DNA of 64,000 nucleotides from Macrostomum lignano. Its lineage: Eukaryota. Below the pieces are notes generated by a model. The model was not told the DNA's origin. It did not search any database and saw only the letters and a list, made by a program, of their open reading frames with translations. Positions within the stretch are counted from its first letter, which is position 1. Each line of letters starts with the position of its first letter. The stretch covers positions 552,227 through 616,226 of the forward strand of contig NIVC01000421.1 in the NCBI GenBank assembly GCA_002269645.1, in the 5' to 3' direction. The translations under genes were made by a program, and so were the position numbers. Of this stretch, positions 4,800 through 64,000 are shown piece by piece.

Positions 4800-6478
4800 C
4801 TAGTCTCCTGTAAGCACTTCAGGGTAAACCACGTTCCTAGTCTTGGTTCCGAAAATTCGCACACGGACATTAGCCGCGTTCTTCGCTCGTGACAGAGCCG
4901 TGTACAGCTGGCCATGAGTGAAGCAACCGACTGCCAGGTCCACGCCAACTGTGTCCAGAGACTGTCCCTGCGACTTGTGGATCGTCAGGCAAAAACTCGG
5001 CTTCACAGGGAACTGCAGCCGCTTAAAACTGACGGGCAGGTCCGCATTGCTTGGAATCAGCGGAATTCGCGGCAGAAGAATCTCGTCTCCCGTGAACTGG
5101 CCGGCGGCAATCTTGCATCTAAGCACGTTATCGCCCATTGCGAGTATGATCAGCCGCGTACCATTGCACATCCGTGGCGGGTTGATGTTCCTGAGAAGCA
5201 CCACCGGCATACCGACTTTCAGCCTCAGCAAGTGAATCGGAAAGTTTGGAGCATCCAGCTGGTTGAGCAACTCAGGCGGGAAGTGCGTAGCGGCATCCTC
5301 ATCGGCCACGCTGTCTATCGAGCGGTACTCCCGCAGGCTGCCGGGGAACATGCCCAGGCACGTCTCATTAATGGCATCGACAGAGTCGTTGTAAGGCGCC
5401 AGGATCGCTCGGCTTGCAAAATAGCCGTCTCTCTCCACTGACTCCTCAAACGATGGGTAAACAAAATTGATTAGATCAGTGAGTGGCCCCTCCGCAGATA
5501 TCACGATCTCGACTGGGAGGGACACTTTCTCCTCCACATCCTGCTCCATTGTTCCAGATCCGATCTGTGAGGAGTGAAACAGTCAGTCAAAAGCTAGCCA
5601 GACTTTTAGGTTAGACATTCTGAATAAAGCACAATAAAAGCATTTTGCATTTTTTTCACAAAAACCCGCCCTTTAAATTTAACACCCGGAATTATTAAAT
5701 ATTTAAGTCAACAAAGACCAAACTTACCTGCTTGAGTAGCTCGGTGTACTTCACATATGTTGCAGAATCGGAACTGCTCAGCAATCGGATGTTTCTCGTC
5801 AGACGATGCCGCCGGAAAAATTTCCACAGCGGGGATCTACTAACACACGCCATAACGTTATTCGCACGCGTCCCATTCAAAACAACTGGCAAGAGCTGGC
5901 GATAGTCACCAGCGCAAACAAACACCAGTCCGCCGAATGGCACGTCCTGCTTTCGCACGTCTCGCAAGCACCGGTCGACTACCTCCAAATCCTTCCGGTT
6001 AGTCATGGAAATCTCGTCCCAGACAATTAGACGCGCTGTCCGAAACACGGCGGCTTGTTTGGACTGCACTCCAACAGAGCAGACGTCCTTGTTAGAGCGG
6101 ACCGCCCGGATAGGGATCTTGAACCTGTCATGAACAGTTGGTTTCGGCGCAATCATGTACAGCGGAACAATGCGGCTTAGTCAGATAGTAAGCAACTCAC
6201 GTGGAATGCGCAGTCTGTCCACCTGGCAACAGAGTCGCTGCGATTCCAGAAGCCGCAACGGCGAGGGCGACTTCCCCCGGCTGCGCACGAAGGCCAGCAA
6301 AACCTCCAGTAGGAAGGTCTTGCCAGTGCCAGCGGGCGCGTCCAGGAAGTGCAAGCCGCCGTTGCCGCTCACAAGATCCTGAGTCACTGACTCGTACACC
6401 GCTTTCTGCTCGTCTGTCAGCATTGGTAAGCGCGCCTCAGTAATCTGCGCTTGCTCGACCGCATCGAACTCGACCGCT
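4800..6478 (-). CDS. Helitron PIF1-family (SF1B) helicase exons
   Basis: Walker A DAPAGTGKT; VALAVAASGIAATLLPGGQTAHST|FKIP; LIVWDEISM; GDYRQLLPV; MCNGTRL; RLQFPVKPSFCLTIHKSQGQSL; HGQLYTALSR; NVVYPEVL before the stop at 4800. Introns at 6125-6200 and 5565-5727. Confidence 0.93.
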
Positions 6479-6567
6479 TAAGTACGCCAGACGCCTACAC
6501 AACCTGCGCCACGCTGTGAAATGACTTACCTGTGAAAGAAACCCTAAAGCAAAATTAACGCAGTTTT

Positions 6568-6638
6568 GGGTAAACGGCAGGAGTAACTATGACTGTCTTA
6601 TCAAGCCTAAATGCCTCGGCATCTAATTAGTACCGCGC
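6568..6638 (+). rRNA. Short diverged 28S rRNA fragment (R2/I-PpoI target region), not a functional rRNA gene
   Basis: gggtaaacggcaggagtaactatgactgtcttatcaagcctaaatgcctcggcatctaattagtaccgcgc aligns by eye to the conserved eukaryotic 28S sequence GGGTAAACGGCGGGAGTAACTATGACTCTCTTAAGGTAGCCAAATGCCTCGTCATCTAATTAGTGACGCGC. Confidence 0.8.
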
Positions 6639-6724
6639 CGCGCCGTACTAATCGCCGCTCGCCGTACGCGCCGCGCCGCGCCGTATTAGATCCGCGCCGG
6701 ACGCCGTCCGCCAAAATGCCCATG

Positions 6725-9700: not shown

Positions 9701-9945
9701 TCAGGTGCAGCGCCGAGTTGTAGCTCCTGATGTTGGCCAGGAACGCGGCACTCAATCTGTGCCGCCCCATGTACAGATCCGCCAGCACTTGCGGCACGGT
9801 GCGGCTGGGCAGCTTCACCTTGCCTTTGGCGCAGCAGAAATTCCTGGTCTCCGCGCGCCAGAGTAGAGCACCACATTCCTGGCATGCCCTGTTCATTGGG
9901 CCGCAATCATGGGCCGGGGCCTCTGGCCTCGGTATTCTGTCAGAC
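6725..9945 (-). CDS. Helitron Zn-finger and HUH Rep domain exons
   Basis: CQECGALLW...CCAKGKV zinc module; GKPDLFVTATCNPNWPEI (motif 1); EYQKR|GLPHVH (HUH motif 2, split by an intron); HGPCG; YPLYRRR; DNR|WVVPY; SVKYVIKYLLKG (catalytic Tyr motif 3); DEIKEYLSARYI. Confidence 0.93.
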
Positions 9946-10635: not shown

Positions 10636-10799
10636 CTGAAAGATTGAAGTTATACTTTAGACTCTGAAAAACTCATTCCCACTGATACAGATTCCTAGAG
10701 AGTCAACAAAAAGTCAATTCTCACAAATGCAGACCCTTACAAACATTCCTCCACATACAGTTTCTTACAGTGGTTTCTTAGAAATTCTGATTCTTAGCA

Positions 10800-12420
10800 C
10801 AAATCCTACAAATAAAGATTCTTAAAAACGTATCCTAGAAATGCAGTTTCTTATATAAACACAGTCCTACAAATAAAGATTCTTAGAAACGTTTCCTAGA
10901 AAAGCAGTTTCTTATATAAACACAGTCCTACAAATAAAGATTCTTAGAAACGTTTCCTAGAAATGCAGTTTCTTATATAAACACAGTCCTACAAATAAAG
11001 ATTCTTAGAAACGTTTCCTAGAAAAGCAGTTTCTTATATAAACACAGTCCTACAAATAAAGATTCTTAGAAACGTTTCCTAGAAAAGCAGTTTCTTATAT
11101 AAACACAGTCCTACAAATAAAGATTCTTAGAAACGTTTCCTAGAAAAGCAGTTTCTTATATAAACACAGTCCTACAAATAAAGATTCTTAGAAACGTTTC
11201 CTAGAAAAGCAGTTTCTTATATAAACACAGTCCTACAAATAAAGATTCTTAGAAACGTTTCCTAGAAATGCAGTTTCTTATGTAAACACAGTCCTACAAA
11301 TAAAGATTCTTAGAAACGTTTCCTAGAAATGCAGTTTCTTATATAAACACAGTCCTACAAATAAAGATTCTTAGAAACGTTTCCTAGAAATGCAGTTTCT
11401 TATATAAACACAGTCCTACAAATAAAGATTCTTAGAAACGTTTCCTAGAAAAGCAGTTTTTTATATAAACACAGTCCTACAAATAAAGATTCTTAGAAAC
11501 GTTTCCTAGAAATGCAGTTTCTTATATAAACACAGTCCTACAAATAAAGATTCTTAGAAACGTTTCCTAGAAAAGCAGTTTCTTATATAAACACAGTCCT
11601 ACAAATAAAGATTCTTAGAAACGTTTCCTAGAAATGCAGTTTCTTATATAAACACAGTCCTACAAATAAAGATTCTTAGAAACGTTTCCTAGAAATGCAG
11701 TTTCTTATATAAACACAGTCCTACAAATAAAGATTCTTAGAAACGTTTCCTAGAAATGCAGTTTCTTATGTAAACACAGTCCTACAAATAAAGATTCTTA
11801 GAAACGTTTCCTAGAAATGCAGTTTCTTATATAAACACAGTCCTACAAATAAAAAATTCTTAGAAACGTTTCCTAGAAAAGCAGTTTCTTATATAAACAT
11901 AGTCCTACAAATAAAGATTCTTAGAAACGTTTCCTAGAAATGCAGTTTCTTATATAAACACAGTCCTACAAATAAAGATTCTTAGAAACGTTTCCTAGAA
12001 ATGCAGTTTCTTATATAAACACAGTCCTACAAATAAAGATTCTTAGAAACGTTTCCTAGAAATGCAGTTTCTTATATAAACACAGTCCTACAAATAAAGA
12101 TTCTTAGAAACGTTTCCTAGAAAAGCAGTTTCTTATATAAACACAGTCCTACAAATAAAGATTCTTAGAAACGTTTCCTAGAAATGCAGTTTCTTATGTA
12201 AACACAGTCCTACAAATAAAGATTCTTAGAAACGTTTCCTAGAAATGCATTTTTTCTTATATAAACACAGTCCTACAAATAAAGATTCTTAGAAACGTTT
12301 CCTAGAAATGCAGTTTCTTATGTAAACACAGTCCTACAAATAAAGATTCTTAGAAACGTTTCCTAGACATGCAGTTTCTTACAAACACATTCCTACAAAC
12401 AAAGATTCTTAGAAAGTTTC
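10800..12420. repeat. 61-bp tandem repeat, about 26 copies, inside Helitron intron 1
   Basis: Unit aaacacagtcctacaaataaagattcttagaaacgtttcctagaaatgcagtttcttatat, period 61, containing the palindrome gaaacgtttc. Confidence 0.95.
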
Positions 12421-29171: not shown

Positions 29172-30353
29172 ATGAGCTCAGCGTCCAGTGCGAAACGGAT
29201 GGTGCAGATACCCCCGGGCTTCAAGGACCTGCTGCAAGAGTTCGCTGTCGCTGTGCTCCGCGAAACTCCGCCGGATGTGGTCGACTTTGCCGTTGATTAC
29301 TTCACTAAACTGCGCGAGCATCGAGAAGAGGACAGAGGCGACGACAATGACAACGAGGACAAGAACTCCGCCGATGGCGAGGGCGACTCTGACGTCGACG
29401 ACGAACCAATTCAGGCGCCGCCGCCGCGTCGAGGAACCCGACGAGTAGCCGTGGCCGGCGAGAGTTTCGACCCGGAGAAGGAGGACGACGACCCGACGCC
29501 GGTGGCCAACCACCCGAAGACCGAGGAGCAGCGGCAGCGCCTGAACGAGGCCATGAAACACATCCTGCTGTTCCGCTGTCTGGACGAGGACCAGGTACGT
29601 GACGTCATCAACGCGATGTTCGAGCGGCGCTGCGAGCCTGGCGAGAAGGTCATCACGCAGGGCGAGGATGGCGACAATTTCTACGTGATCGAATCGGGAG
29701 TCTACGACATTTACGTCCTGATCAACGGCCAGGACACCAAGGTCGGCCAGTACGATAACAAAGGCTCGTTTGGCGAGCTTGCCCTGATGTACAACGCTCC
29801 GCGGGCTGCCACCATCCAGTGCGCCTCACCCGGCAGCATCTGGGCGATGGACCGCGACACCTTCCGTCGTCTGGTCCTGAAGAAGGCCTTCCAGAAGCGA
29901 GTGATGTACGAGAACCTCATCGACTGCGTGCCGCTGCTCAAGCAGCTGGCGCCCTACGAACGGATGAGCATCGCCGACGCGCTGAAATCGAAGATCTACG
30001 AGGACGGCGTGCAGATCATCAGGCAGGGCGACCCGGGCAACGAGATGTACTTCATCGAGGATGGCGAGGTGCGAATCACGCGGGACACCCAGGACGGCAG
30101 CGGGGAGAAGGAGCTGTCCAGACTGCACAAGGGCGGCTACTTCGGCGAGTTGGCCCTGCTGACAAAGCAGCCCCGAGCTGCCAACGTGTACGCCAGCGGC
30201 GGCAGGTGCAAAGTGGCCGTGCTGGATGTCGGGTCCTTCGAGCGCCTTCTCGGCCCCTGTCTGGACATCATGCGGCGTTCCATTGACAGCTACAAGCAGC
30301 AGCTGGAGGCCATCTTTGGCAGCGTTGATGCTGTGCCCGACCTGCGAGCTTGA
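29172..30353 (+). CDS. PRKAR2: cAMP-dependent protein kinase type II regulatory subunit, intronless
   Basis: RII-type docking domain [32 protein letters not shown]; inhibitor site RRVAV; two cNMP domains with phosphate-binding cassettes [15 protein letters not shown] and [15 protein letters not shown]. Start taken at ATG 29172 (alternative 29199); the ORF track extends further upstream. Confidence 0.95.
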
Positions 30354-49909: not shown

Positions 49910-50589
49910 GCCCTAGCAAAATAAATAGTCACTTTGTATTAAAAATTGATTTTTAAAACGATCTATCAAATGTCTCAATTAATTTTTGCCATCTATTCTT
50001 TAAACATATATTCAAGATTTTTTAAGTCATTTTTTCATTTTAAAAATAGAAGTTTATTCATTATTATATAATTTTCATGATTTATGACAAGTTTGATCAA
50101 TATTTACTAATTAACTAACAACTCTTATATTACATTATGGTTTCAGCCTATTTTAATCTTCAGACAACTAAAATGAGCAAAAATTTCTCTGAATCAGATA
50201 AGAGTCTGCTTTGCAATACAATAGCCACTATTGCTATCACAGCTAATAGTGATAGCTCTGTAAATAGCGGATGCAAAGTTTTATCAAAGCATTTGCTTCC
50301 TCTAAAGCCATATGATTGGGTTGAACTTTATAAGGTTATAATTGATTACCACTTCTAAGTCTTAATAAAAAATTAAGCATATTGATTCTAATTTTAAGAT
50401 AAAGAACTTTCTTTTGTAGACAAATCACAATGCTAATGAAGTCAATGCATTTACACTAACACTATCAACTAAAAAAGTTTTTTTGGACAACTTGTTGGAG
50501 TCAGTAAGTTTAAAATGTTGTATTAAAATTATTCTTGCATAAATAGTTAAACTGTTTGAATAATTTAAATTCAAGAATGGGGATTTGAT

Positions 50590-51260
50590 ACCTTGAAGGG
50601 GATTTAGGATCTCAATCCTACCTTGAATGGGATTAAGGATCTCAGTCATACCTTGGAGAGGATTCGATCTTAGACATACCTTGGAGGGTATTTGAGATCT
50701 CAGACATACCTTGGAGGGGATTTGGGATCTTAGACATACCTTGGAGGGGATTTGGGATCTTAGACATACCTTAGACATCTTAGACATCTTAGACTCTTAG
50801 ATCTTAGACATCTCAGACATACCTGGAAAGGGATTTGGGATCTCAGTCATACCTGGAAAGGGATTTGGGATCTCAGTCATACCTGGAAAGGGATTTGGGA
50901 TCTCAGTCATACCTGGAAAGGGATTTGGGATCTCAGTCATACCTGGAAAGGGATTTGGGATCTCAGTCATACATGGAAAGGGATTTGGGATCTCAGTCAT
51001 ACCTGGAAAGGGATTTGGGATCTCAGTCATACCTGGAAAGGGATTTGGGATCTCAGTCATACCTGGAAAGGGATTTGGGATCTCAGTCATACCTGGAAAG
51101 GGATTTGGGATCTCAGTCATACCTGGAAAGGGATTTGGGATCTCAGTCATACCTGGAAAGGGATTTGGGATCTCAGTCATACCTGGAAAGGGATTTGGGA
51201 TCTCAGTCATACATGGAAAGGGATTTGGGATCTCAGTCATACCTCGAAGGGGATTTAATA
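50590..51260. repeat. 30-bp minisatellite
   Basis: Unit acctggaaagggatttgggatctcagtcat, near-perfect from 50821 to 51240 and degenerate to the left. Confidence 0.93.
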
Positions 51261-51319
51261 ACAATCTGTCATAACTAATCCCAGTCAATCAGCCATTCTC
51301 TCTGTCTCGCCCGAATAGA

Positions 51320-54300
51320 CAACCAGATCCCTGTTGCGCAATCATCTGGCTAGCCATTTCGGGCCACTGTCCAGCCTCCACTTGATGAGGCGCAATCGCG
51401 GCGGTGGCAGCCGACTAACCGGCAGCGCCATAGCTGAGTTTGCCTCGCCTCAGTCGGCCACCAGCTGCTTGGCAGCGGAGCCTCCCCAGCTGACCATTCA
51501 CGGGTCGCCGTGCCCGCTACTCGACAAAGATCCCAGCGGCTGCGGCGACGGCGGGCGACCAAGGCGACGTCGATGTAATCTGCTGCGAGCGTCGCCTTTC
51601 TATGAAAAAGCTATCCGTGAAACCGATCCCAGCCCCATGGAATCTGTTGATCCTAACAATTTCTATGGCCAAGATGACGGAGAGGAGGCTGAGGACAAAT
51701 TGGCAGTTCATCAACGTCGAGCTGAACACGCCAATCAGTGCCTGCTGTTCAAAATTAATCCGATGGCTTTTAGAGCTATTTTGGAGCGACTGGATTTGAA
51801 AGATTGGTTTAGACTGTTGGTGAGAGACCTTGCTGTGCTTGTTTCATAACCCTTAAATTAATTCTCAGGTGAGAATCTCCCCAGAATGTCTCTTAGGTGA
51901 GAATCTCCCCCCAAGAATGACTCTCAGGTGAGAATCTTCCCCAGAATGATTCTCAGGTGAGAATCTCCCTCAGAATGATTCTCAGGTGAGAATCTCCCCC
52001 AGAATGACTCTCAGGTGAGAATCTCCCCAGAATGATTCTCAGGTGAGAATCTCCCCAGAATGATTCTCAGGTGAGAATCTCCCCAGAATGATTCTCAGGT
52101 GAGAATCTCCCTCAGAATGATTCTCAGATGAGAATCTCCCCAGAATGATTCTCAGGTGAGAATCTCCCCAGAATGTCTCTCAGGTGAGAATCTCCCCCCC
52201 CCAAGAATGACTCTCAGGTGAGAATCTCCCTCAGAATGATTCTCAGGTGAGAATCTCCCCAGAATGTCTCTTAGGTGAGAATCTTCCCCCCCCACAGAAT
52301 GACTCTCTGGTGAGAATCTCCCCCCAGAATGACTCTCAGGTGAGAATCTCCCTCAGAATGATTCTCAGGTGAGAATCTCCCCAGATGGTTCTCAGATGAG
52401 AATCCCTCCACAGAATGATTCTCAAGTGAGAATCTCCCTCAGAATGATTCTCAAGTGAGAATCTCCTCCAGAATTATTCTCAGGTCAAAGCAAAGCGCCC
52501 ACAACCCCGTCGGTGTCCGCAGGAGGTGTGCAGCTGCACACATCACCGGGTACGCCTCGCGCTGACAGCCACCCGTCAGTTTCGACTGGATGGGTCGCTG
52601 TTCCGACGCGGTTTTCCAGTCCCTTCGCCGCCATTAAACGACAGCCTCTGCATGCGATTGCTGGGCCAATTATCCACAACGCTGACTTGCCTAACTGTCA
52701 ATCTGGCGGATTACAGTCAGCGCAGCATTAGCGGCAAACTGCTGATTGACATTGCGCGACAATTCCCTGCTTTGGAGAGTCTGGAACTCGTGCCTGTACA
52801 GCTAAGCGCGGCCGACTGCCGATCAGCTGGTATCGCGGGGCTTCAGCGACTCGCTCGACTGCGCCTGCTGATGCCGCCGCCCGAGCAGAGGTTTGTCGCT
52901 AGCAGGGGAGCTTACGGTGGCCTTGGCTTCAGCAGCAGCTTCAGCAGCGGCTACGGCGACTGGACTGGGGACGAGTGTCGAATCACTGAAGATGGCCTCT
53001 GGCACCTGCTGAAGGTGATGGATTGTTTGATGAGTTGATAACGGATTCTGGGTTTCGGTAGAGATGATGGATTCTGGGTTCTGGTAGAGACTAAGGATTC
53101 TGGGTTTCGGTAGAGATGATGGATTCTGGGTTCTGGTAGAGACTAGGGATTCTGGGTTTCGGTAGAGATGATGATGGATGCTGTGTTCCAGTAGAGATGA
53201 TGATGGATGCTGGGTGTCAGTGGAGATGATGATGGATTCTGGGTGTCAGTAGAGATGATGATAGATGCTGGGTGTCAGTAGAGATGATGATGGATGCTGA
53301 GTGTCAGAACCTAAAGCCGCTCCCCACCGCACGCAGACCGTGGGTCCCAGACTGGAGGAGCTTCGCGTCCCGGCCGCCGGCCTCAGCGGCAAGTGCTTCC
53401 ACTTCCTGACCGACCGCCTGACCATCCTGGAGCTGGTTGGTGTCGTCTCGCCGCGCGTACTTCGCCGATTGACCGAAGCCGCCTGCTGTCGGTCGCTTCG
53501 CTGCCTCCTGGTTGTCGCCGCTCCGCCAAGCCGCACTCCCGCTGGCTGTCGTCTTGCCGACTGGCTCGACTGGCAGCCAAGCGACCTCTACGCCCGATTG
53601 CCGCGTCTGTGCATCGCCGACTTTGCCGGCCGCGGCGTCAGCTGCTCGGCTCGTCACGTTGAGCTGCCGGTCGGACAGGAGATCGGCTACTTCGGACGTC
53701 GGCACGGCGATTTGGGATCGGCAGATATTGGACAGGCCAGGCGTGGCGAGAGATGGCTGAGCGTGCTCACCGCGTTCACCTGCGTTTCCTGCCTGGTGCT
53801 CACGGATACGTCTGTGAGTTGGTTGATGGATGATGGGATTTTGGGATTGATGGATGATGGGATTTTGGGATTGACAAATGATGGGATTTTGGGATCGACG
53901 GGTGATGGGATTTTGGGATTAACGGATGATGGGATTTTGGGATTGATGGATGATGGGATTTTGGGATTGATGGATGATGGGATTTTGGGATTGATGGATG
54001 ATGGGATTTTGGGATTGATGGATGATGGGATTTTGGGATTGACGGATGATGGGATTTTGGGATTGACCGATAATGGGATTTTGGGATTGACGGATAATGG
54101 GATTTTGGGATTGATGGATGATGGGATTTTGGGATTGATGGATGATGGGATTTCGGGATTGATGGATGATGGGATTTTGGGATTGACGGATGATGGGATT
54201 TTGGGATTGACCGATAATGGGATTTTGGGATTGATAGATGATGGGATTTTGGGATTGACGGATGATGGGATTTTAGGATGAACGAATAATGGGATTTTGG

Positions 54301-55487
54301 GATCGACAAATGATGGGATTTTGGGATTAACGGATGATGGGATTTTATGATTGTTGAATGATGGGTTTCGGGGATTTGAGGATAAAGATTGGAGATTTGG
54401 GTTGAGATCTTTAGACTGGGTTTAGTTGCATTGCATTGTGCATTGGGTGATGGCGTGTTAGGCTGTGCATGTTTAAGTAAGTCGATGTGGGTTCTCTCGG
54501 ATCGTGTCTAGAACATGCACTGCCCGCTACCCCTGGCCATGGCCAGGTGGACGACCAGTGTCTGCAGGCGGTGAGCCAGCGCCTGTCCAGCAGTCTGCAG
54601 GCCCTGTGCCTCACCCACTGCACCCGGATCAGCGCCTCAGGCTTTTGCGCGCTCGCCGAGTGCTCCAAATTGCGTCGGCTCCGAGTTTCCTGCACGCAGT
54701 TCGACCTCGGCGTTTCAACCCGTCTGCCTCCGCCGGGACTGCAGGAGCTGGCGGTGGCCTCCTGCCACCGGCTGGGCCAGCCTGTGCAGCCCGGCGTGCT
54801 GCGACGCTTCCTGGCACTTCGCCAACTCGTCAGTCTCGACCTGTCCTTCTGCGTCGGACTGCCGACTGCCGACGAGATTGCCGATTGTCTTCGTCGGACC
54901 GACAGCGTCGCTGCCGCTGCTAAGCTAACCATCTACTGTAGGGGTGTCAGCGTGCCGATTGCGCAGGTTAGTACGATGAAGCTTTGGCGTCTCAGCCTCG
55001 GCAATCCCATTTAACCCGTTAACAACGTTACCGTGACAAGAATCTTGTGACTTCTCTTCAATTTCTTGACTATCTGACGATCTGAATGCGGTTATTCTTA
55101 CTGTTAAAGAGTCATACTCGTACCTTTATGAAACTTCAGGAGCAACTGGACTCGATGAATCTAAATAGGCCAGTCGAGTTTAACAACCATCGATATCCAT
55201 CGTCGTCATTGACTTGTACTCAGCAGGACGGCTGGTCCAATAGCGACTGGACCGCAACAGCCGCCCAGTCGGTACGGCCAATGTGCCTGCCGACACACTG
55301 GGTTCACCCCACTGCCACCGAAGCAGCCCGCCAGCAGGACCTGGAAGGCGGCTACGAGCACTATGTGGGCGAGTTCGACCTCATAGAGGACGAGCACGAC
55401 TTCGATTTTGACGATACGGACGATGAAGATTATACAGACGAAGACTTAATCGACTGGGTTGACGACGGATCAGATTTTAGCTATTGA
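51320..55487 (+). CDS. F-box / leucine-rich-repeat protein (FBXL-like), multi-exon
   Basis: F-box [25 protein letters not shown]|EVC spans the first intron. LRR motifs include [44 protein letters not shown]. The acidic C-terminus ends at 55487. Approximate exons: ~51320-51829, 52522-53013, ~53310-53813, ~54483-54966, 55140-55487. The start and one junction are uncertain. Confidence 0.75.
51860..52485. repeat. Intronic ~29-bp minisatellite with a palindromic core containing TTCTCAG|GTGAG
   Basis: Unit gattctcaggtgagaatctccccagaat; gattctca and tgagaatc are reverse complements. Confidence 0.92.
53040..53300. repeat. Intronic degenerate repeat (ggattctgggtt..ggtagagatgat)
   Basis: Directly visible between FBXL exons. 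Confidence 0.8.
53820..54350. repeat. Intronic 24-bp minisatellite
   Basis: Unit gatgatgggattttgggattgatg, beginning after the donor gtgagt at ~53814. Confidence 0.92.
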
Positions 55488-55991
55488 TGACAGAAGGCTG
55501 CGATGATGCTGTCAGCATGCTCTGTGTTGCATTTTGCTCACCCTTTAAACCAGTTTAAATATACAAACGTTAGAAACTATTAACTACCAATAACAACACT
55601 AAAAAGCTGCACTTCAAAAGTTTTATAATAGTACTTGAACTTAATTTGCTTCCCGATATATATTGTAAACGTCATTCATAAACGCTTAAACAAACAGATC
55701 CGATACCTTATGTTACTTTAGTATAGAGCATGGCTGACAGGCTACGATTTACGTACTGTATAAAATGCGTCTGCGCTTTACAGTGCAGAGCTGTAGAGAC
55801 TGCAGTTTGTGTAGTATGTAATAACTGAGTATGATGCGACATTGATTAGTAAACGGCCAGCACATGTAATTACAGTATACTATAAGTTGCAGTTTGATTA
55901 GCAGGCATCCAGCAACTCGTACAGGTCGGTAGGAGCGCCGCGATCAAGCCAGCATACAGGTTGGTATAGCGCGATCCGCAACGCACATCGA

Positions 55992-56117
55992 TCACTTCTT
56001 CTTATGACCGCCCTTGGCAGCGGCCTGCTCGCCCTCGGCTTTTTCCGGCTGCTGCTTGGCGGCGTCCTTGTTGGCATCGGCGGCCTTCTTGTCGGCGGCG
56101 GCTTTCTTGGCAGGCAT
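55992..56117 (-). CDS. Microprotein A, copy 1 (41 aa, MPAKKAAADKKAADANKDAAKQQPEKAEGEQAAAKGGHKKK)
   Basis: ATG at 56117 in an acaaacATG context, TGA at 55992; G/C-ending codons; paralogous to microprotein B. Not in the ORF track because it is under 60 aa. Confidence 0.6.
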   Translation of the reverse strand: MPAKKAAADKKAADANKDAAKQQPEKAEGEQAAAKGGHKKK

Positions 56118-56840
56118 GTTTGTCTGTTGAGATTAGGAAGCTGATGCTTGAAGCATGAATTTGAGAAGCGAGCAGCTGCGGTTTGCAAGGTGACCAACGT
56201 CAACTTCAAGTATAGCTAGCTGGCTGTACATCCTCATTAGAAAAACTATCTAGATATGTCCTAAAGGGCACTTCTTCTTATTTAACCGCTTATTGGAGCA
56301 GTGCAGCTCTACAAGGAACATTGGTGCATATCTAGCCTCTAGTTGGATGTGCTGGACAACGAAATCTAGAGGATGCTATATCAAGCCAAATGCAAGTAAT
56401 GCCCCCTTTCTCTGTCTGCAACTGCTGATCTAACACAAAACATCCTAAGCATATAGGGAAACAGAGAGCATTTAAAGAACGAGAGCCGAAAACACCTGCT
56501 TGCTTTAAAAATACTGTCCAATATGTAATTAGGAAATGCTACTGTAATTATTCTACAATCAAACAACTTTTTTCAAAGGATCAATTTACAACTATAAGCT
56601 TTCGTCAGCACGTGAGTAAGGTTAGTACAGTACAGAATACAGTAAGTAACCTAATTGCAGTTTCAGAGCTGGATGCAGCGACTCTTTAGCCCTAACAAAG
56701 ACGATACGCTAATGCGGACAGATTATAGTATACTGTACAGGTATAGAGAGAGCTCAGAGTTCCACTCAGTCACGCCAATAGTAGGCCTGGCTGTCATGCG
56801 GTGCAGAGCACACCTAACAATTGATCTCTCTGAAATCGCA

Positions 56841-56981
56841 TCACTTCTTCTGACCGGCCTTGGCGGCAGCGCCACCAGCCTGCTGTTGTTGTTGCTGCTG
56901 CTTTTGCTGCTTGGCGTCCTTGTTGGCATCGGCTGCCTGCTGCTTGCCGGCTCCCTGCTGCTGGTTCTGCTTGGCTGGCAT
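56841..56981 (-). CDS. Microprotein B, copy 1 (46 aa, MPAKQNQQQGAGKQQAADANKDAKQQKQQQQQQQAGGAAAKAGQKK)
   Basis: ATG at 56981 (the ORF track starts upstream at a non-ATG codon). Shares MPAK, AADANKD, KQQ and AAAK.G.KK-stop with protein A. Confidence 0.6.
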   Translation of the reverse strand: MPAKQNQQQGAGKQQAADANKDAKQQKQQQQQQQAGGAAAKAGQKK

Positions 56982-57868
56982 TCTGTGTTTTGCTTTTTGT
57001 GCTTGAAAGCTGCTTAGAGCTGCAATCGGGGCGACAGTAAGCAAGTCATATAGTGCTCACACAACAACAACACACACACAGCAGCGAACGAAGTCTGCGT
57101 GCATCTTAATCAAGTAGCTAGCTAGAATTTTTAAGTGCTACCAACCAGAGTATAACTTAGCTAAATACCAAAGGAATTTCACTCTTTCTACTCATACAAC
57201 TAATGATCGACGCTGGTTGCATTGATAAACCTGATGACCTGACCAGCTCGCAAGGGATGCCTAGAAATTATACATTTACGAGCCGTATACTCCATTTCCA
57301 CAGATTAGTCTACAAAAGCCCAGTAGCTAATTATTGCACTGCAAAATGTCTAACTCTTATACATAAACTGAAACAGCCCCACTGTCAGCCTGTGAGCGAG
57401 AGGCCCCTAAGCCTTGAGGAGCATGAAACTATATACGTGACTAGGAAGCAGCAAAAATATTGGTAAAAGTAGAGCTCAAGCCGAAAAACGATTGTTGGTT
57501 GTTTCAACAACTTTGTAAGTAACTGATGCACCCAGTACAACAATGTAATTTACGACAAGTACATGACTGCCCGTCAGAACAGAGCAGCTGGTACCATAGT
57601 ATAGAGCATGGCTGACAGGCTACGATTTACGTACTGTATAAAATGCGTCTGCGCTTTACAGTGCAGAGCTGTAGAGACTGCAGTTGTGTAGTATGTAATA
57701 ACTGAGTATGATGCAACATTGATTAGTATCCGGCCAGCACATGTAATTACAATTCGCTATAAGTTGCAGTTTGATCAGCAGGCATCCAGCAACTCGTACA
57801 GGTCGGTAGGAGCGCCGCGATCAAGCCAGCATACAGGTTGGTATAGCGCGATCCGCAACGCACATCGA

Positions 57869-57994
57869 TCACTTCTTCTTATGACCGCCCTTGGCAGCGG
57901 CCTGCTCGCCCTCGGCTTTTTCCGGCTGCTGCTTGGCGGCGTCCTTGTTGGCATCGGCGGCCTTCTTGTCGGCGGCGGCTTTCTTGGCAGGCAT
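57869..57994 (-). CDS. Microprotein A, copy 2
   Basis: Same sequence as copy 1. Confidence 0.6.
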   Translation of the reverse strand: MPAKKAAADKKAADANKDAAKQQPEKAEGEQAAAKGGHKKK

Positions 57995-58717
57995 GTTTGT
58001 CTGTTGAGATTAGGAAGCTGATGCTTGAAGCTGCAATTTGAGAAGCGAGCAGCTGCGGTTTGCAAGGTGACCAACGTCAACTTCAAGTATAGCTAGCTGG
58101 CTGTACATCCTCATTAGAAAAACTATCTAGATATGTCCTAAAGGGCACTTCTTCTTATTTAACCGCTTATTGGAGCAGTGCAGCTCTACAAGGAACATTG
58201 GTGCATATCTAGCCTCTAGTTGGATGTGCTGGACAACGAAATCTAGAGGATGCTATATCAAGCCAAATGCAAGTAATGCCCCCTTTCTCTGTCTGCAACT
58301 GCTGATCTAACACAAAACATCCTAAGCATATAGGGAAACAGAGAGCATTTAAAGAACGAGAGCCGAAAACACCTGCTTGCTTTAAAAATACTGTCCAATA
58401 TGTAATTAGGAAATGCTACTGTAATTATTCTACAATCAAACAACTTTTTTCAAAGGATCAATTTACAACTATAAGCTTTCGTCAGCACGTGAGTAAGGTT
58501 AGTACAGTACAGAATACAGTAAGTAACCTAATTGCAGTTTCAGAGCTGGATGCAGCGACTCTTTAGCCCTAACAAAGACGATACGCTAATGCGGACAGAT
58601 TATAGTATACTGTACAGGTATAGAGAGAGCTCAGAGTTCCACTCAGTCACGCCAATAGTAGGCCTGGCTGTCATGCGGTGCAGAGCACACCTAACAATTG
58701 ATCTCTCTGAAATCGCA

Positions 58718-58858
58718 TCACTTCTTCTGACCGGCCTTGGCGGCAGCGCCACCAGCCTGCTGTTGTTGTTGCTGCTGCTTTTGCTGCTTGGCGTCCTTGT
58801 TGGCATCGGCTGCCTGCTGCTTGCCGGCTCCCTGCTGCTGGTTCTGCTTGGCTGGCAT
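58718..58858 (-). CDS. Microprotein B, copy 2
   Basis: Same translation as copy 1. Confidence 0.6.
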   Translation of the reverse strand: MPAKQNQQQGAGKQQAADANKDAKQQKQQQQQQQAGGAAAKAGQKK

Positions 58859-59745
58859 TCTGTGTTTTGCTTTTTGTGCTTGAAAGCTGCTTAGAGCTGC
58901 AATCGGGGCGACAGTAAGCAAGTCATATAGTGCTCACACAACAACAACACACACACAGCAGCGAACGAAGTCTGCGTGCATCTTAATCAAGTAGCTAGCT
59001 AGAATTTTTAAGTGCTACCAACCAGAGTATAACTTAGCTAAATACCAAAGGAATTTCACTCTTTCTACTCATACAACTAATGATCGACGCTGGTTGCATT
59101 GATAAACCTGATGACCTGACCAGCTCGCAAGGGATGCCTAGAAATTATACATTTACGAGCCGTATACTCCATTTCCACAGATTAGTCTACAAAAGCCCAG
59201 TAGCTAATTATTGCACTGCAAAATGTCTAACTCTTATACATAAACTGAAACAGCCCCACTGTCAGCCTGTGAGCGAGAGGCCCCTAAGCCTTGAGGAGCA
59301 TGAAACTATATACGTGACTAGGAAGCAGCAAAAATATTGGTAAAAGTAGAGCTCAAGCCGAAAAACGATTGTTGGTTGTTTCAACAACTTTGTAAGTAAC
59401 TGATGCACCCAGTACAACAATGTAATTTACGACAAGTACATGACTGCCCGTCAGAACAGAGCAGCTGGTACCATAGTATAGAGCATGGCTGACAGGCTAC
59501 GATTTACGTACTGTATAAAATGCGTCTGCGCTTTACAGTGCAGAGCTGTAGAGACTGCAGTTGTGTAGTATGTAATAACTGAGTATGATGCAACATTGAT
59601 TAGTATCCGGCCAGCACATGTAATTACAATTCGCTATAAGTTGCAGTTTGATCAGCAGGCATCCAGCAACTCGTACAGGTCGGTAGGAGCGCCGCGATCA
59701 AGCCAGCATACAGGTTGGTATAGCGCGATCCGCAACGCACATCGA

Positions 59746-59871
59746 TCACTTCTTCTTATGACCGCCCTTGGCAGCGGCCTGCTCGCCCTCGGCTTTTTCC
59801 GGCTGCTGCTTGGCGGCGTCCTTGTTGGCATCGGCGGCCTTCTTGTCGGCGGCGGCTTTCTTGGCAGGCAT
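59746..59871 (-). CDS. Microprotein A, copy 3
   Basis: Same sequence as copy 1. Confidence 0.6.
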   Translation of the reverse strand: MPAKKAAADKKAADANKDAAKQQPEKAEGEQAAAKGGHKKK

Positions 59872-60594
59872 GTTTGTCTGTTGAGATTAGGAAGCTGATG
59901 CTTGAAGCTGCAATTTGAGAAGCGAGCAGCTGCGGTTTGCAAGGTGACCAACGTCAACTTCAAGTATAGCTAGCTGGCTGTACATCCTCATTAGAAAAAC
60001 TATCTAGATATGTCCTAAAGGGCACTTCTTCTTATTTAACCGCTTATTGGAGCAGTGCAGCTCTACAAGGAACATTGGTGCATATCTAGCCTCTAGTTGG
60101 ATGTGCTGGACAACGAAATCTAGAGGATGCTATATCAAGCCAAATGCAAGTAATGCCCCCTTTCTCTGTCTGCAACTGCTGATCTAACACAAAACATCCT
60201 AAGCATATAGGGAAACAGAGAGCATTTAAAGAACGAGAGCCGAAAACACCTGCTTGCTTTAAAAATACTGTCCAATATGTAATTAGGAAATGCTACTGTA
60301 ATTATTCTACAATCAAACAACTTTTTTCAAAGGATCAATTTACAACTATAAGCTTTCGTCAGCACGTGAGTAAGGTTAGTACAGTACAGAATACAGTAAG
60401 TAACCTAATTGCAGTTTCAGAGCTGGATGCAGCGACTCTTTAGCCCTAACAAAGACGATACGCTAATGCGGACAGATTATAGTATACTGTACAGGTATAG
60501 AGAGAGCTCAGAGTTCCACTCAGTCACGCCAATAGTAGGCCTGGCTGTCATGCGGTGCAGAGCACACCTAACAATTGATCTCTCTGAAATCGCA

Positions 60595-60735
60595 TCACTT
60601 CTTCTGACCGGCCTTGGCGGCAGCGCCACCAGCCTGCTGTTGTTGTTGCTGCTGCTTTTGCTGCTTGGCGTCCTTGTTGGCATCGGCTGCCTGCTGCTTG
60701 CCGGCTCCCTGCTGCTGGTTCTGCTTGGCTGGCAT
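60595..60735 (-). CDS. Microprotein B, copy 3
   Basis: Same translation as copy 1. Confidence 0.6.
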   Translation of the reverse strand: MPAKQNQQQGAGKQQAADANKDAKQQKQQQQQQQAGGAAAKAGQKK

Positions 60736-61620
60736 TCTGTGTTTTGCTTTTTGTGCTTGAAAGCTGCTTAGAGCTGCAATCGGGGCGACAGTAAGCAAGT
60801 CATATAGTGCTCACACAACAACAACACACACAGCAGCGAACGAAGTCTGCGTGCATCTTAATCAAGTAGCTAGCTAGAATTTTTAAGTGCTACCAACCAG
60901 AGTATAACTTAGCTAAATACCAAAGGAATTTCACTCTTTCTACTCATACAACTAATGATCGACGCTGGTTGCATTGATAAACCTGATGACCTGACCAGCT
61001 CGCAAGGGATGCCTAGAAATTATACATTTACGAGCCGTATACTCCATTTCCACAGATTAGTCTACAAAAGCCCAGTAGCTAATTATTGCACTGCAAAATG
61101 TCTAACTCTTATACATAAACTGAAACAGCCCCACTGTCAGCCTGTGAGCGAGAGGCCCCTAAGCCTTGAGGAGCATGAAACTATATACGTGACTAGGAAG
61201 CAGCAAAAATATTGGTAAAAGTAGAGCTCAAGCCGAAAAACGATTGTTGGTTGTTGCAACAACTTTGTAAGTAACTGATGCACCCAGTACAACAATGTAA
61301 TTTACGACAAGTACATGACTGCCCGTCAGAACAGAGCAGCTGGTACCATAGTATAGAGCATGGCTGACAGGCTACGATTTACGTACTGTATAAAATGCGT
61401 CTGCGCTTTACAGTGCAGAGCTGTAGAGACTGCAGTTGTGTAGTATGTAATAACTGAGTATGATGCAACATTGATTAGTATCCGGCCAGCACATGTAATT
61501 ACAATTCGCTATAAGTTGCAGTTTGATCAGCAGGCATCCAGCAACTCGTACAGGTCGGTAGGAGCGCCGCGATCAAGCCAGCATACAGGTTGGTATAGCG
61601 CGATCCGCAACGCACATCGA

Positions 61621-61746
61621 TCACTTCTTCTTATGACCGCCCTTGGCAGCGGCCTGCTCGCCCTCGGCTTTTTCCGGCTGCTGCTTGGCGGCGTCCTTGT
61701 TGGCATCGGCGGCCTTCTTGTCGGCGGCGGCTTTCTTGGCAGGCAT
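61621..61746 (-). CDS. Microprotein A, copy 4
   Basis: Same sequence as copy 1. Confidence 0.6.
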   Translation of the reverse strand: MPAKKAAADKKAADANKDAAKQQPEKAEGEQAAAKGGHKKK

Positions 61747-62469
61747 GTTTGTCTGTTGAGATTAGGAAGCTGATGCTTGAAGCTGCAATTTGAGAAGCGA
61801 GCAGCTGCGGTTTGCAAGGTGACCAACGTCAACTTCAAGTATAGCTAGCTGGCTGTACATCCTCATTAGAAAAACTATCTAGATATGTCCTAAAGGGCAC
61901 TTCTTCTTATTTAACCGCTTATTGGAGCAGTGCAGCTCTACAAGGAACATTGGTGCATATCTAGCCTCTAGTTGGATGTGCTGGACAACGAAATCTAGAG
62001 GATGCTATATCAAGCCAAATGCAAGTAATGCCCCCTTTCTCTGTCTGCAACTGCTGATCTAACACAAAACATCCTAAGCATATAGGGAAACAGAGAGCAT
62101 TTAAAGAACGAGAGCCGAAAACACCTGCTTGCTTTAAAAATACTGTCCAATATGTAATTAGGAAATGCTACTGTAATTATTCTACAATCAAACAACTTTT
62201 TTCAAAGGATCAATTTACAACTATAAGCTTTCGTCAGCACGTGAGTAAGGTTAGTACAGTACAGAATACAGTAAGTAACCTAATTGCAGTTTCAGAGCTG
62301 GATGCAGCGACTCTTTAGCCCTAACAAAGACGATACGCTAATGCGGACAGATTATAGTATACTGTACAGGTATAGAGAGAGCTCAGAGTTCCACTCAGTC
62401 ACGCCAATAGTAGGCCTGGCTGTCATGCGGTGCAGAGCACACCTAACAATTGATCTCTCTGAAATCGCA

Positions 62470-62610
62470 TCACTTCTTCTGACCGGCCTTGGCGGCAGCG
62501 CCACCAGCCTGCTGTTGTTGTTGCTGCTGCTTTTGCTGCTTGGCGTCCTTGTTGGCATCGGCTGCCTGCTGCTTGCCGGCTCCCTGCTGCTGGTTCTGCT
62601 TGGCTGGCAT
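62470..62610 (-). CDS. Microprotein B, copy 4
   Basis: Same translation as copy 1. Confidence 0.6.
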   Translation of the reverse strand: MPAKQNQQQGAGKQQAADANKDAKQQKQQQQQQQAGGAAAKAGQKK

Positions 62611-63490
62611 TCTGTGTTTTGCTTTTTGTGCTTGAAAGCTGCTTAGAGCTGCAATCGGGGCGACAGTAAGCAAGTCATATAGTGCTCACACAACAACAAC
62701 ACACACACAGCAGCGAACGAAGTCTGCGTGCATCTTAATCAAGTAGCTAGCTAGAATTTTTAAGTGCTACCAACCAGAGTATAACTTAGCTAAATACCAA
62801 AGGAATTTCACTCTTTCTACTCATACAACTAATGATCGACGCTGGTTGCATTGATAAACCTGATGACCTGACCAGCTCGCAAGGGATGCCTAGAAATTAT
62901 ACATTTACGAGCCGTATACTCCATTTCCACAGATTAGTCTACAAAAGCCCAGTAGCTAATTGCACTGCAAAATGTCTAACTCTTATACATAAACTGAAAC
63001 AGCCCCACTGTCAGCTGTGAGCGAGAGGCCCCTAAGCCTTGAGGAGCATGAAACTATATACGTGACTAGGAAGCAGCAAAAATATTGGTAAAAGTAGAGC
63101 TCAAGCCGAAAAACGATTGTTGGTTGTTGCAACAACTTTGTAAGTAACTGATGCACCCAGTACAACAATGTAATTTACGACAAGTACATGACTGCCCATC
63201 AGAACAGAGCAGCTGGTACCATAGTATAGAGCATGGCTGACAGGCTACGATTTACGTACTGTATAAAATGCGTCTGCGCTTTACAGTGCAGAGCTGTAGA
63301 GACTGCAGTTGTGTAGTATGTAACTGAGTATGATGCAACATTGATTAGTATCCGGCCAGCACATGTAATTACAGTTCGCTATAAGTTGCAGTTTGATCAG
63401 CAGGCATCCAGCAACTCGTACAGGTCGGTAGGAGCGCCGCGATCAAGCCAGCATACAGGTTGGTATAGCGCGATCCGCAACGCACATCGA

Positions 63491-63612
63491 TCACTTCTTC
63501 TTATGACCGCCCTTGGCAGCGGCCTGCTCGCCCTCGGCTTTTCCGGCTGCTGCTTGGCGTCCTTGTTGGCATCGGCGGCCTTCTTGTCGGCGGCGGCTTT
63601 CTTGGCAGGCAT
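63491..63612 (-). pseudogene. Microprotein A, copy 5, with a 3-bp deletion and a 1-bp frameshift
   Basis: Reads MPAKKAAADKKAADANKDAKQQPEK and then shifts frame at a shortened T-run. Other homopolymer losses nearby suggest consensus error. Confidence 0.45.
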
Positions 63613-64000
63613 GTTTGTCTGTTGAGATTAGGAAGCTGATGCTTGAAGCTGCAATTTGAGAAGCGAGCAGCTGCGGTTTGCAAGTGACCAACGTCAACTT
63701 CAAGTATAGCTAGCTGGCTGTACATCCTCATTAGAAAAACTATCTAGATATGTCCTAAGGGCACTTCTTCTTATTAACCGCTTATTGGAGCAGTGCAGCT
63801 CTACAAGGAACATTGGTGCATATCTAGCCTCTAGTTGGATGTGCTGGACAACGAAATCTAGAGATGCTATATCAAGCCAAATGCAAGTAATGCCCCCTTT
63901 CTCTGTCTGCAACTGCTGATCTAACACAAAACATCTAAGCATATAGGGAAACAGAGAGCATTTAAAGAACGAGAGCCGAAAACACCTGCTTGCTTTAAAA

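What the first reader, a model, noticed from the sequence alone, without database searches (positions are those of the whole stretch)
55719..64000. Tandem gene array encoding a pair of unannotated paralogous microproteins
Seen: each 1.88-kb unit has two co-oriented minus-strand smORFs, A (41 aa) and B (46 aa). Both begin MPAK, share AADANKD(A)AKQQ (identical 20-nt gcgtccttgttggcatcggc) and end AAAK.G.KK-stop. Their length differences keep the frame and their codons end in G/C like the PKA gene, while the spacers are AT-richer and unrelated. Known: homogenised tandem arrays typify dosage-hungry genes such as histones. Inference: a high-expression two-component family of small, disordered, basic proteins. 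I recognise no homolog, and there is no histone fold or signal peptide. This is the best candidate for an undescribed system in the window.
Basis: partly seen in the sequence, partly recalled or inferred. Interest (0 to 1): 0.8.

Follow-up and report, generated by a model that had tools for sequence, protein, structure and literature searches.

The report
Flatworm tandem array of two microprotein genes
This is a real, transcribed and spliced tandem gene array of the flatworm Macrostomum lignano, in which two related 41- and 46-residue reading frames alternate; they encode very basic proteins with no hydrophobic residues, no relatives in other organisms, unproven translation and unknown function.

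Summary
Window 55719-64000 (minus strand) holds 4.4 copies of an 1875-1877 bp unit. Each unit carries smORF A (41 aa) and smORF B (46 aa), which are clear paralogs.

The window is Macrostomum lignano. The array is 99.6-99.9% identical to two GenBank contigs of assembly GCA_002269645.1, one of which holds 12 units. It is 97% identical to a third, homeologous array.

"Unannotated" is only partly right. RNA-seq-derived GenBank models (PAA49765.1, PAA92363.1, PAA46468.1) overlap the ORFs, but they carry spurious N-terminal extensions or a frameshift.

Those models prove two things. A GT-AG intron of 615 nt runs from 234 nt after the A stop to 38 nt before the next B start. A leader exon lies upstream of the array and is spliced onto the first B exon. 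Both acceptors fit the M. lignano spliced-leader acceptor motif.

Coding evidence is moderate:
- A/B similarity is confined to the stretch from ATG to stop.
- All indels are in frame.
- Codon usage favours this frame.
- dN/dS is about 0.5, which is not significant.
- 46 of 48 copies are intact.

No homolog, Pfam domain, Rfam family or transposon feature was found. Function is unknown. I infer small basic disordered or helical proteins made at high dose.

The parts
55719..64000 (-). Tandem array: 4 full units plus a partial unit of 1875-1877 bp. It continues beyond the window end. Its 3' edge is at 55719.
   Evidence: The same array has at least 11.5 units in L003 and at least 5.7 units in the homeologous L001.
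57869..57994 (-). smORF A (41 aa, MPAKKAAADKKAADANKDAAKQQPEKAEGEQAAAKGGHKKK). Identical copies lie at 55992-56117, 59746-59871 and 61621-61746.
   Evidence: Codon usage favours this frame.
58718..58858 (-). smORF B (46 aa, MPAKQNQQQGAGKQQAADANKDAKQQKQQQQQQQAGGAAAKAGQKK). Identical copies lie at 56841-56981, 60595-60735 and 62470-62610.
   Evidence: B is contained whole in GenBank PAA49765.1 and PAA92363.1.
63491..63612 (-). Fifth A copy. It has an in-frame loss of GCC plus a 1-nt deletion in an A5 run, which shifts the frame. It lies in a partial unit with seven single-base deletions.
   Evidence: Probably assembly error or a degenerate copy.
57635..58030 (-). A exon (396 nt): acceptor AAATTGCAG|CT, 36-nt 5'UTR, A ORF, then 234 nt up to the donor ACA|GTACGT. 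Other copies lie at 55757-56153, 59512-59907 and 61387-61782.
   Evidence: The donor is proven by reconstructing PAA49765.1. The acceptor is inferred from the motif [T/C]TNCAG.
57020..57634 (-). GT-AG intron (615 nt) from the A exon to the next B exon. Other copies lie at 58897-59511 and 60774-61386 (613 nt).
   Evidence: Splicing L002 10001-10085 to 10701-10879 gives exactly the 87-aa GenBank protein.
56841..57019 (-). B exon from the acceptor GATTGCAG|CT (38-nt 5'UTR) to the B stop. Its 3' end is not defined. Other copies start at 58896, 60773 and 62648.
   Evidence: The acceptor is used by both GenBank models. The 56- and 58-aa gene models start at this exon's first bases.
58031..58717 (-). 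B-to-A spacer (687 nt, GC 0.42). It would contain the B 3'UTR and the outron or intron before the A acceptor. It has no AATAAA or ATTAAA and no GTRAG donor.
   Evidence: Role inferred.
57939..57958 (+). 20-nt block identical in A and B (GCGTCCTTGTTGGCATCGGC, encoding ADANKDA on the minus strand). There are 9 copies in the array.

Best explanation
The region is a lineage-restricted tandem gene array of Macrostomum lignano, with 12 or more units per locus and at least two homeologous loci.

Shown:
- Each unit carries two exons, one holding smORF B and one holding smORF A.
- The array is transcribed on the minus strand of the window.
- A GC-rich leader exon about 1.8 kb upstream of the array is spliced onto the first B exon.
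- Each A exon has a 5' splice site 234 nt after its stop, which is spliced across a 615-nt intron onto the next B exon.
- The units are kept almost identical, presumably by unequal exchange or gene conversion.

Inferred: a promoter upstream of the leader exon drives a long read-through precursor, since the unit has no AATAAA or ATTAAA. The TTGCAG|CT acceptors in front of A and B are used both in cis and by spliced-leader trans-splicing. This would yield SL-B mRNAs and SL-A(-B) mRNAs.

Inferred, about 0.6: the translated products are A (4.2 kDa, pI 9.8) and B (4.8 kDa, pI 10.2). They are paralogous, Ala/Lys/Gln-rich microproteins with no hydrophobic, aromatic, Cys, Ser, Thr or Arg residues. They cannot form a folded core and would exist as soluble lone helices or disordered chains.

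Most likely role, at low confidence (about 0.25): abundant polycationic hydrophilic proteins made in 1:1 gene dosage. They would act either as protective hydrophilin-like or 'Hero'-like solubilisers, or as nucleic-acid or chromatin counter-ions.
For: Species and public copies: the only protein relatives among 1.84 billion representatives are three M. lignano GenBank entries. Their contigs carry the same array at 99.6-99.9% identity (L002, L003) and at 97% (L001).

Transcription and splicing: the annotation was built from RNA-seq with StringTie/TACO/TBONE and TransDecoder (PMC5730564). Joining L002 10001-10085 to 10701-10879, and L003 10001-10124 to the first B exon, reproduces PAA49765.1 and PAA92363.1 exactly, at GT-AG boundaries. 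The acceptors TTGCAG fit the M. lignano SL acceptor motif [T/C]TNCAG (PMC8629364). The 56- and 58-aa gene models begin at the first bases of the B exon.

Coding:
- A/B alignment z-scores are 10.3 for the ORF, 2.0 for the 5'UTR and 1.1 and 0.3 for the 3' flanks. BLAST similarity is confined to the ORF.
- There are 20 identical, 4 synonymous and 17 non-synonymous codons, and all indels are multiples of 3.
- dN/dS is 0.50.
- Frame 1 is the best sense frame by codon usage: +0.60 and +0.19 bits per codon, against -0.5 to -1.8 for the other frames.
- A is intact in 22 of 24 copies and B in 24 of 24.
- Between homeologous arrays B is unchanged, and A differs by N16S plus an in-frame loss of Ala.
- Proven exon sequence shows 1.0% events and the rest 2.4%. 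This parallels the genome-wide paralog SNP rates of 1.1% in CDS and 2.2% overall (PMC10733133).

Product properties. AlphaFold single-sequence models predict helices 4-22 and 24-37 in A and helix 8-42 in B, with pLDDT 71-76.
Against: - There is no direct evidence of translation.
- The ORFs are built largely from GCC, CAG and AAG triplets, so in-frame indels could come from triplet slippage without selection.
- dN/dS of 0.5 rests on about 25 synonymous sites and is not significant.
- The exon-versus-rest difference between homeologs has p = 0.07.
- Antisense frame 1 also scores positive on codon usage.
- The 20-nt block with no synonymous change suggests gene conversion or a constraint at the nucleotide level.
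- A spliced A-B transcript would be dicistronic, which disfavours translation of B unless B also receives its own spliced leader.
- No ortholog from another species is available.
- Two copies carry frameshifts. Both are homopolymer deletions at array or contig edges.
- SL usage, poly(A) sites, expression level and tissue could not be examined.
Confidence: 0.6

Rival explanations
1. The array encodes a spliced long non-coding RNA. The A and B reading frames would be incidental products of GCC/CAG/AAG-rich exon sequence, and the conserved block would act at the RNA level.
For: - The ORFs are low-complexity and triplet-rich.
- dN/dS is only about 0.5 and is not significant.
- The 20-nt block is exactly identical, with no synonymous change.
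- There is no homolog in any other species.
- The GenBank CDSs are longest-ORF artefacts.
- The spliced A-B arrangement is dicistronic.
Against: - A/B similarity starts at the shared ATG and stops at the shared TGA, and the 3' flanks are unrelated.
- Four conserved residues use different synonymous codons.
- Codon usage singles out this sense frame.
- Both ATGs have A at position -3.
- 46 of 48 copies are intact.
- No Rfam match was found, even at E <= 1.
Confidence: 0.22
2. It is a young, selectively neutral macro-satellite or segmental tandem duplication that is transcribed incidentally. Under this reading the ORFs are recent de novo frames without function.
For: - The units are almost identical, with 5 variable columns in 1877, as in satellites.
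- About 15% of the M. lignano genome is simple and tandem repeat.
- The sequence is found only in this species.
- The constraint statistics are marginal.
Against: - A and B are old paralogs whose flanks have diverged beyond alignment while the ORFs stay 70% identical. The two-ORF unit therefore predates the amplification.
- The array is retained, with both frames intact, in a homeologous subgenome copy.
- It has a dedicated leader exon and regular GT-AG splicing.
Confidence: 0.12
3. The functional product is something else in the unit: an intronic snoRNA or other small RNA (a host-gene model), a transposon or LTR, or a longer protein read in another frame (the Pro/Arg/Ser-rich 59-103 aa ORFs that overlap A and B).
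For: - Introns make up most of the unit.
- The overlapping +1 frames both start MPTRTP, from an ATG inside the shared 20-mer, and share an RRSD motif.
- One GenBank model, of 153 aa, spans 9.5 kb of the array and could not be reconstructed.
Against: - Rfam gives no match at gathering score or at E <= 1.
- There is no tRNA.
- There is no C box on either strand.
- Every other unit ORF lacks a Pfam or transposon domain.
- There are no dispersed copies in the other 55.7 kb of the window.
- The alternative frames fit codon usage poorly, and their ends fall in unrelated sequence.
Confidence: 0.05

Closest known systems
Spliced-leader-resolved operons and polycistronic transcriptional units of M. lignano, nematodes and tunicates
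   Same: The ORF-bearing exons are co-oriented behind one upstream leader exon. The acceptors match the species' SL acceptor motif. Public models are numbered as several genes within one transcriptional unit (Mlig001540g3).
   Different: Here the 'operon' is a homogenised tandem repeat of the same two smORFs. One junction (A exon to next B exon) is a proven cis-intron, so cis- and trans-splicing would compete at the same acceptor. SL reads could not be inspected.
Polycistronic smORF genes such as Drosophila tarsal-less / polished rice
   Same: Several very short, paralogous ORFs sharing a conserved core motif lie on one transcript, and annotation pipelines miss or mis-call them.
   Different: The tarsal-less ORFs are 11-32 aa with an LDPTGXY core on a single unspliced message. 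Here the ORFs are 41-46 aa, sit on separate exons and are repeated 12 or more times. There is no sequence relationship.
Dosage-driven tandem arrays for small abundant proteins: histone clusters, protamine-like genes, and the winter flounder type I antifreeze genes that encode about 40-aa Ala-rich helices
   Same: The array is homogenised and head-to-tail, with more than one gene type per unit. The products are small, Ala/Lys-rich and predicted to be helical.
   Different: There is no histone fold or H1 globular domain, no Arg, and no Thr periodicity as in antifreeze peptides. Units are joined by splicing rather than being independent genes. The resemblance rests on my own knowledge and on composition only.
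Hydrophilins and heat-resistant obscure (Hero) proteins, SERF/4F5, TMA7
   Same: The proteins are very hydrophilic (GRAVY -1.5 and -1.8), Gly is 7-11%, and they are charged, lack a hydrophobic core and are small.
   Different: There is no sequence match to the Pfam 4F5 or TMA7 models or to any other family. Stress induction and protective activity are untested.

Membership tests
Histone / linker-histone-like chromatin proteins | Histone fold or winged-helix H1 globular domain detectable by profile | tested here: not met
   Pfam hmmscan at E <= 10 gave no family for A or B. A PDB profile search at E <= 10 gave none. At 41 and 46 aa, with no hydrophobic residues, the proteins cannot form such a fold.
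Conserved eukaryotic basic microproteins (TMA7, SERF/4F5) | Match to the family profile | tested here: not met
   There were no Pfam hits at E <= 10. A HMMER search of 1.84 billion representatives found only M. lignano entries.
Hydrophilins (operational class) | Gly above about 6% and very high hydrophilicity | tested here: met
   A has 3 Gly in 41 residues and GRAVY -1.47. B has 5 Gly in 46 residues and GRAVY -1.81. The criterion is taken from my own knowledge of the class.
Hydrophilins (operational class) | Accumulation under water deficit or osmotic stress | not testable with these tools
   No expression data could be reached. The gene IDs are absent from paper texts and from the supplements that were searched.
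SL trans-spliced operon of M. lignano | Acceptor with the motif [T/C]TNCAG at the 5' end of each cistron | tested here: met
   TTGCAG|CT lies 36 nt before the A ATG and 38 nt before the B ATG. The motif comes from PMC8629364.
SL trans-spliced operon of M. lignano | RNA-seq reads carrying the 35-nt spliced leader joined at those acceptors | not testable with these tools
   The only evidence is indirect: the 56- and 58-aa gene models begin at the first bases of the B exon.
Transposon / LTR terminal repeat | Transposon protein domains, terminal repeats, dispersed copies | tested here: not met
   No unit ORF has a Pfam domain. There is no copy elsewhere in the window or in the 11.6-kb upstream flank of L003.
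snoRNA or other structured-RNA gene array / host gene | Rfam family match, or C/D box signature | tested here: not met
   Rfam gave 0 matches over the whole window at gathering score and 0 over the unit at E <= 1. There is no RUGAUGA on either strand. H/ACA-type RNAs are not excluded.
Protein-coding gene (generic) | Purifying selection on the reading frame | tested here: inconclusive
   dN/dS between A and B is 0.50 on 24.7 synonymous sites. The homeolog comparison shows 0 changes in B and 2 in A. The frame and both ORF boundaries are conserved.

The most novel reading that the evidence does not exclude
One promoter drives a precursor of a dozen or more alternating smORF exons. Competition between cis-splicing (A exon to next B exon) and spliced-leader trans-splicing at the same acceptors then sets the output of two orphan microproteins made in fixed 1:1 gene dosage. 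These proteins have no hydrophobic residues and would act together as an abundant polycationic helical or disordered pair, for example in stress protection or as nucleic-acid counter-ions. This would be a species- or genus-specific microprotein system with an expression architecture not described for animal smORFs.
Probability: 0.22. Interest if true: 0.65.

Novelty: new variant of a known kind. Interest (0 to 1): 0.45.

Why it matters
If A and B are translated, this is an orphan microprotein pair that standard pipelines mis-annotate. TransDecoder's longest-ORF rule produced 71-, 87- and 100-aa artefacts instead of the 41- and 46-aa products.

It sits in a transgenesis-capable regeneration model, where it can be tested directly. 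The architecture is a tandem array whose units are spliced to one another behind a single leader exon. That would make a compact case for studying how cis- and SL trans-splicing share acceptors, and how very short ORFs reach high dosage.

If the ORFs are not translated, it is simply a transcribed macro-satellite and of limited interest.

Tried and rejected
- Exact-sequence look-ups of A, B and the PKA-R ORF found nothing on record.
- The word-indexed search with B returned nothing although B is contained in P0002 and P0003, which is an index or bias-filter limitation. Repeating it with P0002 returned only P0002 and P0003.
- Pfam, NCBIfam and PDB profile searches of A and B gave no hits.
- A metagenome scan produced 600 pattern matches, none of them a relative.
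- The M. lignano spliced-leader sequence is not in the window, so this is not an SL RNA array.
- Rfam, tRNA and C-box scans were negative.
- I tried to reconstruct the 153-aa GenBank model that spans L003 17552-27111. There is no 2-exon solution and there are 56 equally possible 3-exon solutions, so I abandoned it.
- I looked for a canonical donor or a poly(A) signal after B. There is no GTRAG and no AATAAA or ATTAAA in the unit. A weak candidate, ACA|GTATAC 108 nt after the B stop, remains unsupported.
- The gene IDs Mlig030344, Mlig001540 and Mlig029044 appear in no paper text and in none of the supplements that could be searched.
- Membership in histone, TMA7, SERF, HMGN or antifreeze families, which I recalled from composition, was rejected for lack of any profile match.


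Full report
**1. Observation**

The region 55719-64000 is a head-to-tail repeat with start-to-start spacing of 1877, 1877, 1875 and 1870 bp. BLAST against related contigs puts its 3' edge exactly at 55719, and it runs off the window at 64000.

On the minus strand each unit carries smORF B and smORF A:
- B is 46 aa, with its ATG at 56981, 58858, 60735 and 62610.
- A is 41 aa, with its ATG at 56117, 57994, 59871 and 61746.

The two products align with 23 invariant positions: MPAK, AADANKDA, KQQ and AAAK.G.KK. The shared 20-mer occurs nine times, against 0.00 expected. The A/B length differences are 12, 6 and 3 nt. GC3 is 0.80 and 0.74, against 0.82 in the PKA regulatory-subunit ORF of the same window. 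ORF GC is 0.62-0.64 and spacer GC 0.42-0.43.

The description is therefore correct, with one exception. The fifth A copy (63491-63612) has lost one GCC and one A of an A5 run, so it is frame-shifted. That partial unit carries seven single-base deletions in 1062 nt. This is the signature of long-read consensus error or of a degenerate copy.

**2. Organism and public counterparts**

A word-indexed search with A found one protein, and a full HMMER scan of 1.84 billion representatives with the A+B profile found three. All are Macrostomum lignano GenBank 'hypothetical proteins': PAA46468.1, PAA49765.1 and PAA92363.1.

Their contigs in assembly GCA_002269645.1 carry the same array:
- L003 is the end of a 1.24-Mb contig. 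It has 12 B and 11 A copies and is 99.6% identical to the window.
- L002 has 2.5 units and is 99.8% identical.
- L001 has a unit of 1870-1875 bp and is 97% identical. There A is 40 aa (N16S plus an in-frame loss of one Ala) and B is unchanged.

M. lignano has three recently diverged subgenomes, with paralog SNP rates of about 2.2% overall and 1.1% in CDS (PMC10733133). L001 is therefore best read as the homeologous array.

Within an array, only 5 of 1877 columns vary across 14 units. That is concerted evolution.

**3. Transcription and splicing**

The GenBank annotation was derived from RNA-seq by StringTie/TACO. Boundaries were cut at spliced-leader and poly(A) signals by TBONE, and CDSs were chosen by TransDecoder (PMC5730564).

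The 87-aa PAA49765.1 begins in a short ORF in the 3' part of the A exon and continues in frame into B. Joining L002 10001-10085 to 10701-10879 reproduces it exactly. This defines the donor ACA|GTACGT 234 nt after the A stop, the acceptor GATTGCAG|CT 38 nt before the B ATG, and a 615-nt intron. In window coordinates the introns are 57020-57634, 58897-59511 and 60774-61386.

The 100-aa partial PAA92363.1 is reproduced by joining a GC-rich exon to the first B exon. That exon is L003 10001-10124, with donor CAT|GTAAGT, and it lies 1.5 kb upstream of the array's first base.

So the array is transcribed, has a leader exon of its own, and its units are spliced to one another. Both array edges fall inside the A-to-B intron.

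The acceptors before A and before B are both TTGCAG|CT. They fit the SL trans-splice acceptor motif [T/C]TNCAG reported for this species (PMC8629364). Two further public models, of 56 and 58 aa, start at the first bases of the B exon, as expected if TBONE cut there at an SL peak.

The unit has no AATAAA or ATTAAA, and there is no GTRAG donor downstream of B. How the B exon ends is therefore unknown.

**4. Are A and B coding?**

In favour:
- When the two half-units are compared, similarity is confined to the ORF (BLAST).
- Segment-wise global alignment gives z = 10.3 for the ORF, 2.0 for the 5'UTR, 2.6 for the 60 nt before the acceptor, and 1.1 and 0.3 for the 3' flanks. The conserved block thus begins at the shared ATG and ends at the shared TGA.
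- Four of the 23 conserved residues use different synonymous codons.
- Codon usage modelled on the PKA-R ORF scores +0.60 (A) and +0.19 (B) bits per codon in this frame, against -0.5 to -1.8 in the other sense frames.
- A is intact in 22 of 24 copies and B in 24 of 24. The two broken copies are homopolymer deletions at array or contig edges.
- Proven exon sequence differs between homeologous arrays at 1.0% of positions and the rest at 2.4%.

Against, or weak:
- That last contrast has p = 0.07.
- Nei-Gojobori dN/dS between A and B is 0.50, on only 24.7 synonymous sites.
- The ORFs are triplet-rich, so in-frame indels may be slippage.
- Antisense frame 1 also scores positive.
- The 20-nt block has no synonymous change at all.
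- No ortholog from another species is available.

I put translation of A and B at about 0.6.

**5. What the products would be**

A is 4.2 kDa with pI 9.8 and net charge +5. B is 4.8 kDa with pI 10.2 and net charge +6, and is 35% Gln. Neither contains I, L, V, F, W, Y, C, S, T or R, and GRAVY is -1.5 and -1.8.

Single-sequence AlphaFold models give helices 4-22 and 24-37 in A and one helix 8-42 in B, at pLDDT 71-76. A hydrophobic core is impossible.

There is no signal peptide or membrane segment, and no Pfam, NCBIfam or PDB match. The proteins meet the compositional definition of hydrophilins, but nothing more can be tested here.

My working model is an abundant pair of soluble polycations, either protective 'Hero'-like or hydrophilin-like proteins or nucleic-acid counter-ions. 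This is an inference at about 0.25.

**6. Alternatives examined**

- Structured RNA: Rfam found nothing in the whole window at gathering score, and nothing in a unit at E <= 1. There are no tRNAs, no C box on either strand, and no SL RNA sequence.
- Transposon: none of the other unit ORFs has a domain. The unit has no other copy in the window or in the L003 flank.
- Alternative frames: the overlapping +1 frames (59-103 aa, rich in Pro, Arg and Ser, both starting MPTRTP inside the 20-mer) fit codon usage poorly and end in unrelated sequence.
- Still open: a non-coding or neutral macro-satellite reading cannot be excluded, and I give the two together about one third.

**7. Comparison and novelty**

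The closest analogues by mode of action are SL-resolved operons, polycistronic smORF genes such as tarsal-less, and dosage arrays for small abundant proteins. Membership of any protein family was tested and not met.

The loci are already in GenBank, but mis-modelled, and I found no paper that mentions them.

I rate it a new variant of a known kind. It is a homogenised array of two orphan smORF exons joined by inter-unit splicing. Interest is moderate because translation, expression level and function are all still open.

Noticed in passing
window 4800-9900 (minus strand): ORFs with Helitron_like_N (E = 9e-46) and Pif1/UvrD helicase domains. This is a Helitron transposon remnant or copy.
   Followed up: no
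window 29172-30353 (+): A complete PKA type-II regulatory subunit (RIIa docking domain plus two cNMP-binding domains) in a single uninterrupted 393-codon ORF. It matches mammalian RII-alpha at E = 2e-121. This exact protein is not on record in the public gene collection.
   Followed up: partly
window 50588-54376: A run of long minisatellites with periods of 30, 29/57, 29/58/87 and 24 nt and about 20 copies each. They overlap plus-strand ORFs of 170-326 aa that have no Pfam match. The next ORF (54487-55014) has weak LRR hits, and 55086-55487 ends in an acidic tail that converges on the array.
   Followed up: no
window 62939-64000: The partial unit at the window edge differs from the others almost only by seven 1-nt deletions and three 3-nt deletions. 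Two of the 3-nt deletions (the GCC in A and a TTA) match the homeologous L001 array. This suggests a mosaic or poorly polished stretch of assembly.
   Followed up: partly
L003 17552-27111: A public gene model with a 153-aa product starts at a B-exon start and ends at a B stop 9.5 kb (five units) away. Its exon structure could not be reconstructed uniquely.
   Followed up: partly
window 57939-57958 and every other copy of the 20-mer: The only block that is perfectly identical between A and B contains an ATG in the +1 frame. That ATG opens overlapping ORFs, both beginning MPTRTP and both containing RRSD. It could be chance from shared sequence, or a nucleotide-level constraint.
   Followed up: partly
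A and B exon starts, e.g. window 58030 and 58896: The M. lignano spliced leader ends in ATG. If it is trans-spliced here, it would open a 7-codon upstream ORF before A (ATG|CTT CAA GCA TCA GCT TCC TAA) and a 2-codon one before B (ATG|CTC TAA). Both end before the main ATG.
   Followed up: no
A codon 37 and B codon 42 (e.g. window 57884-57886 and 58733-58735, minus strand): Both paralogs use GGT at the conserved Gly before the C-terminal Lys run. This codon is used 0 times among the 29 Gly codons of the PKA-R ORF.
   Followed up: no
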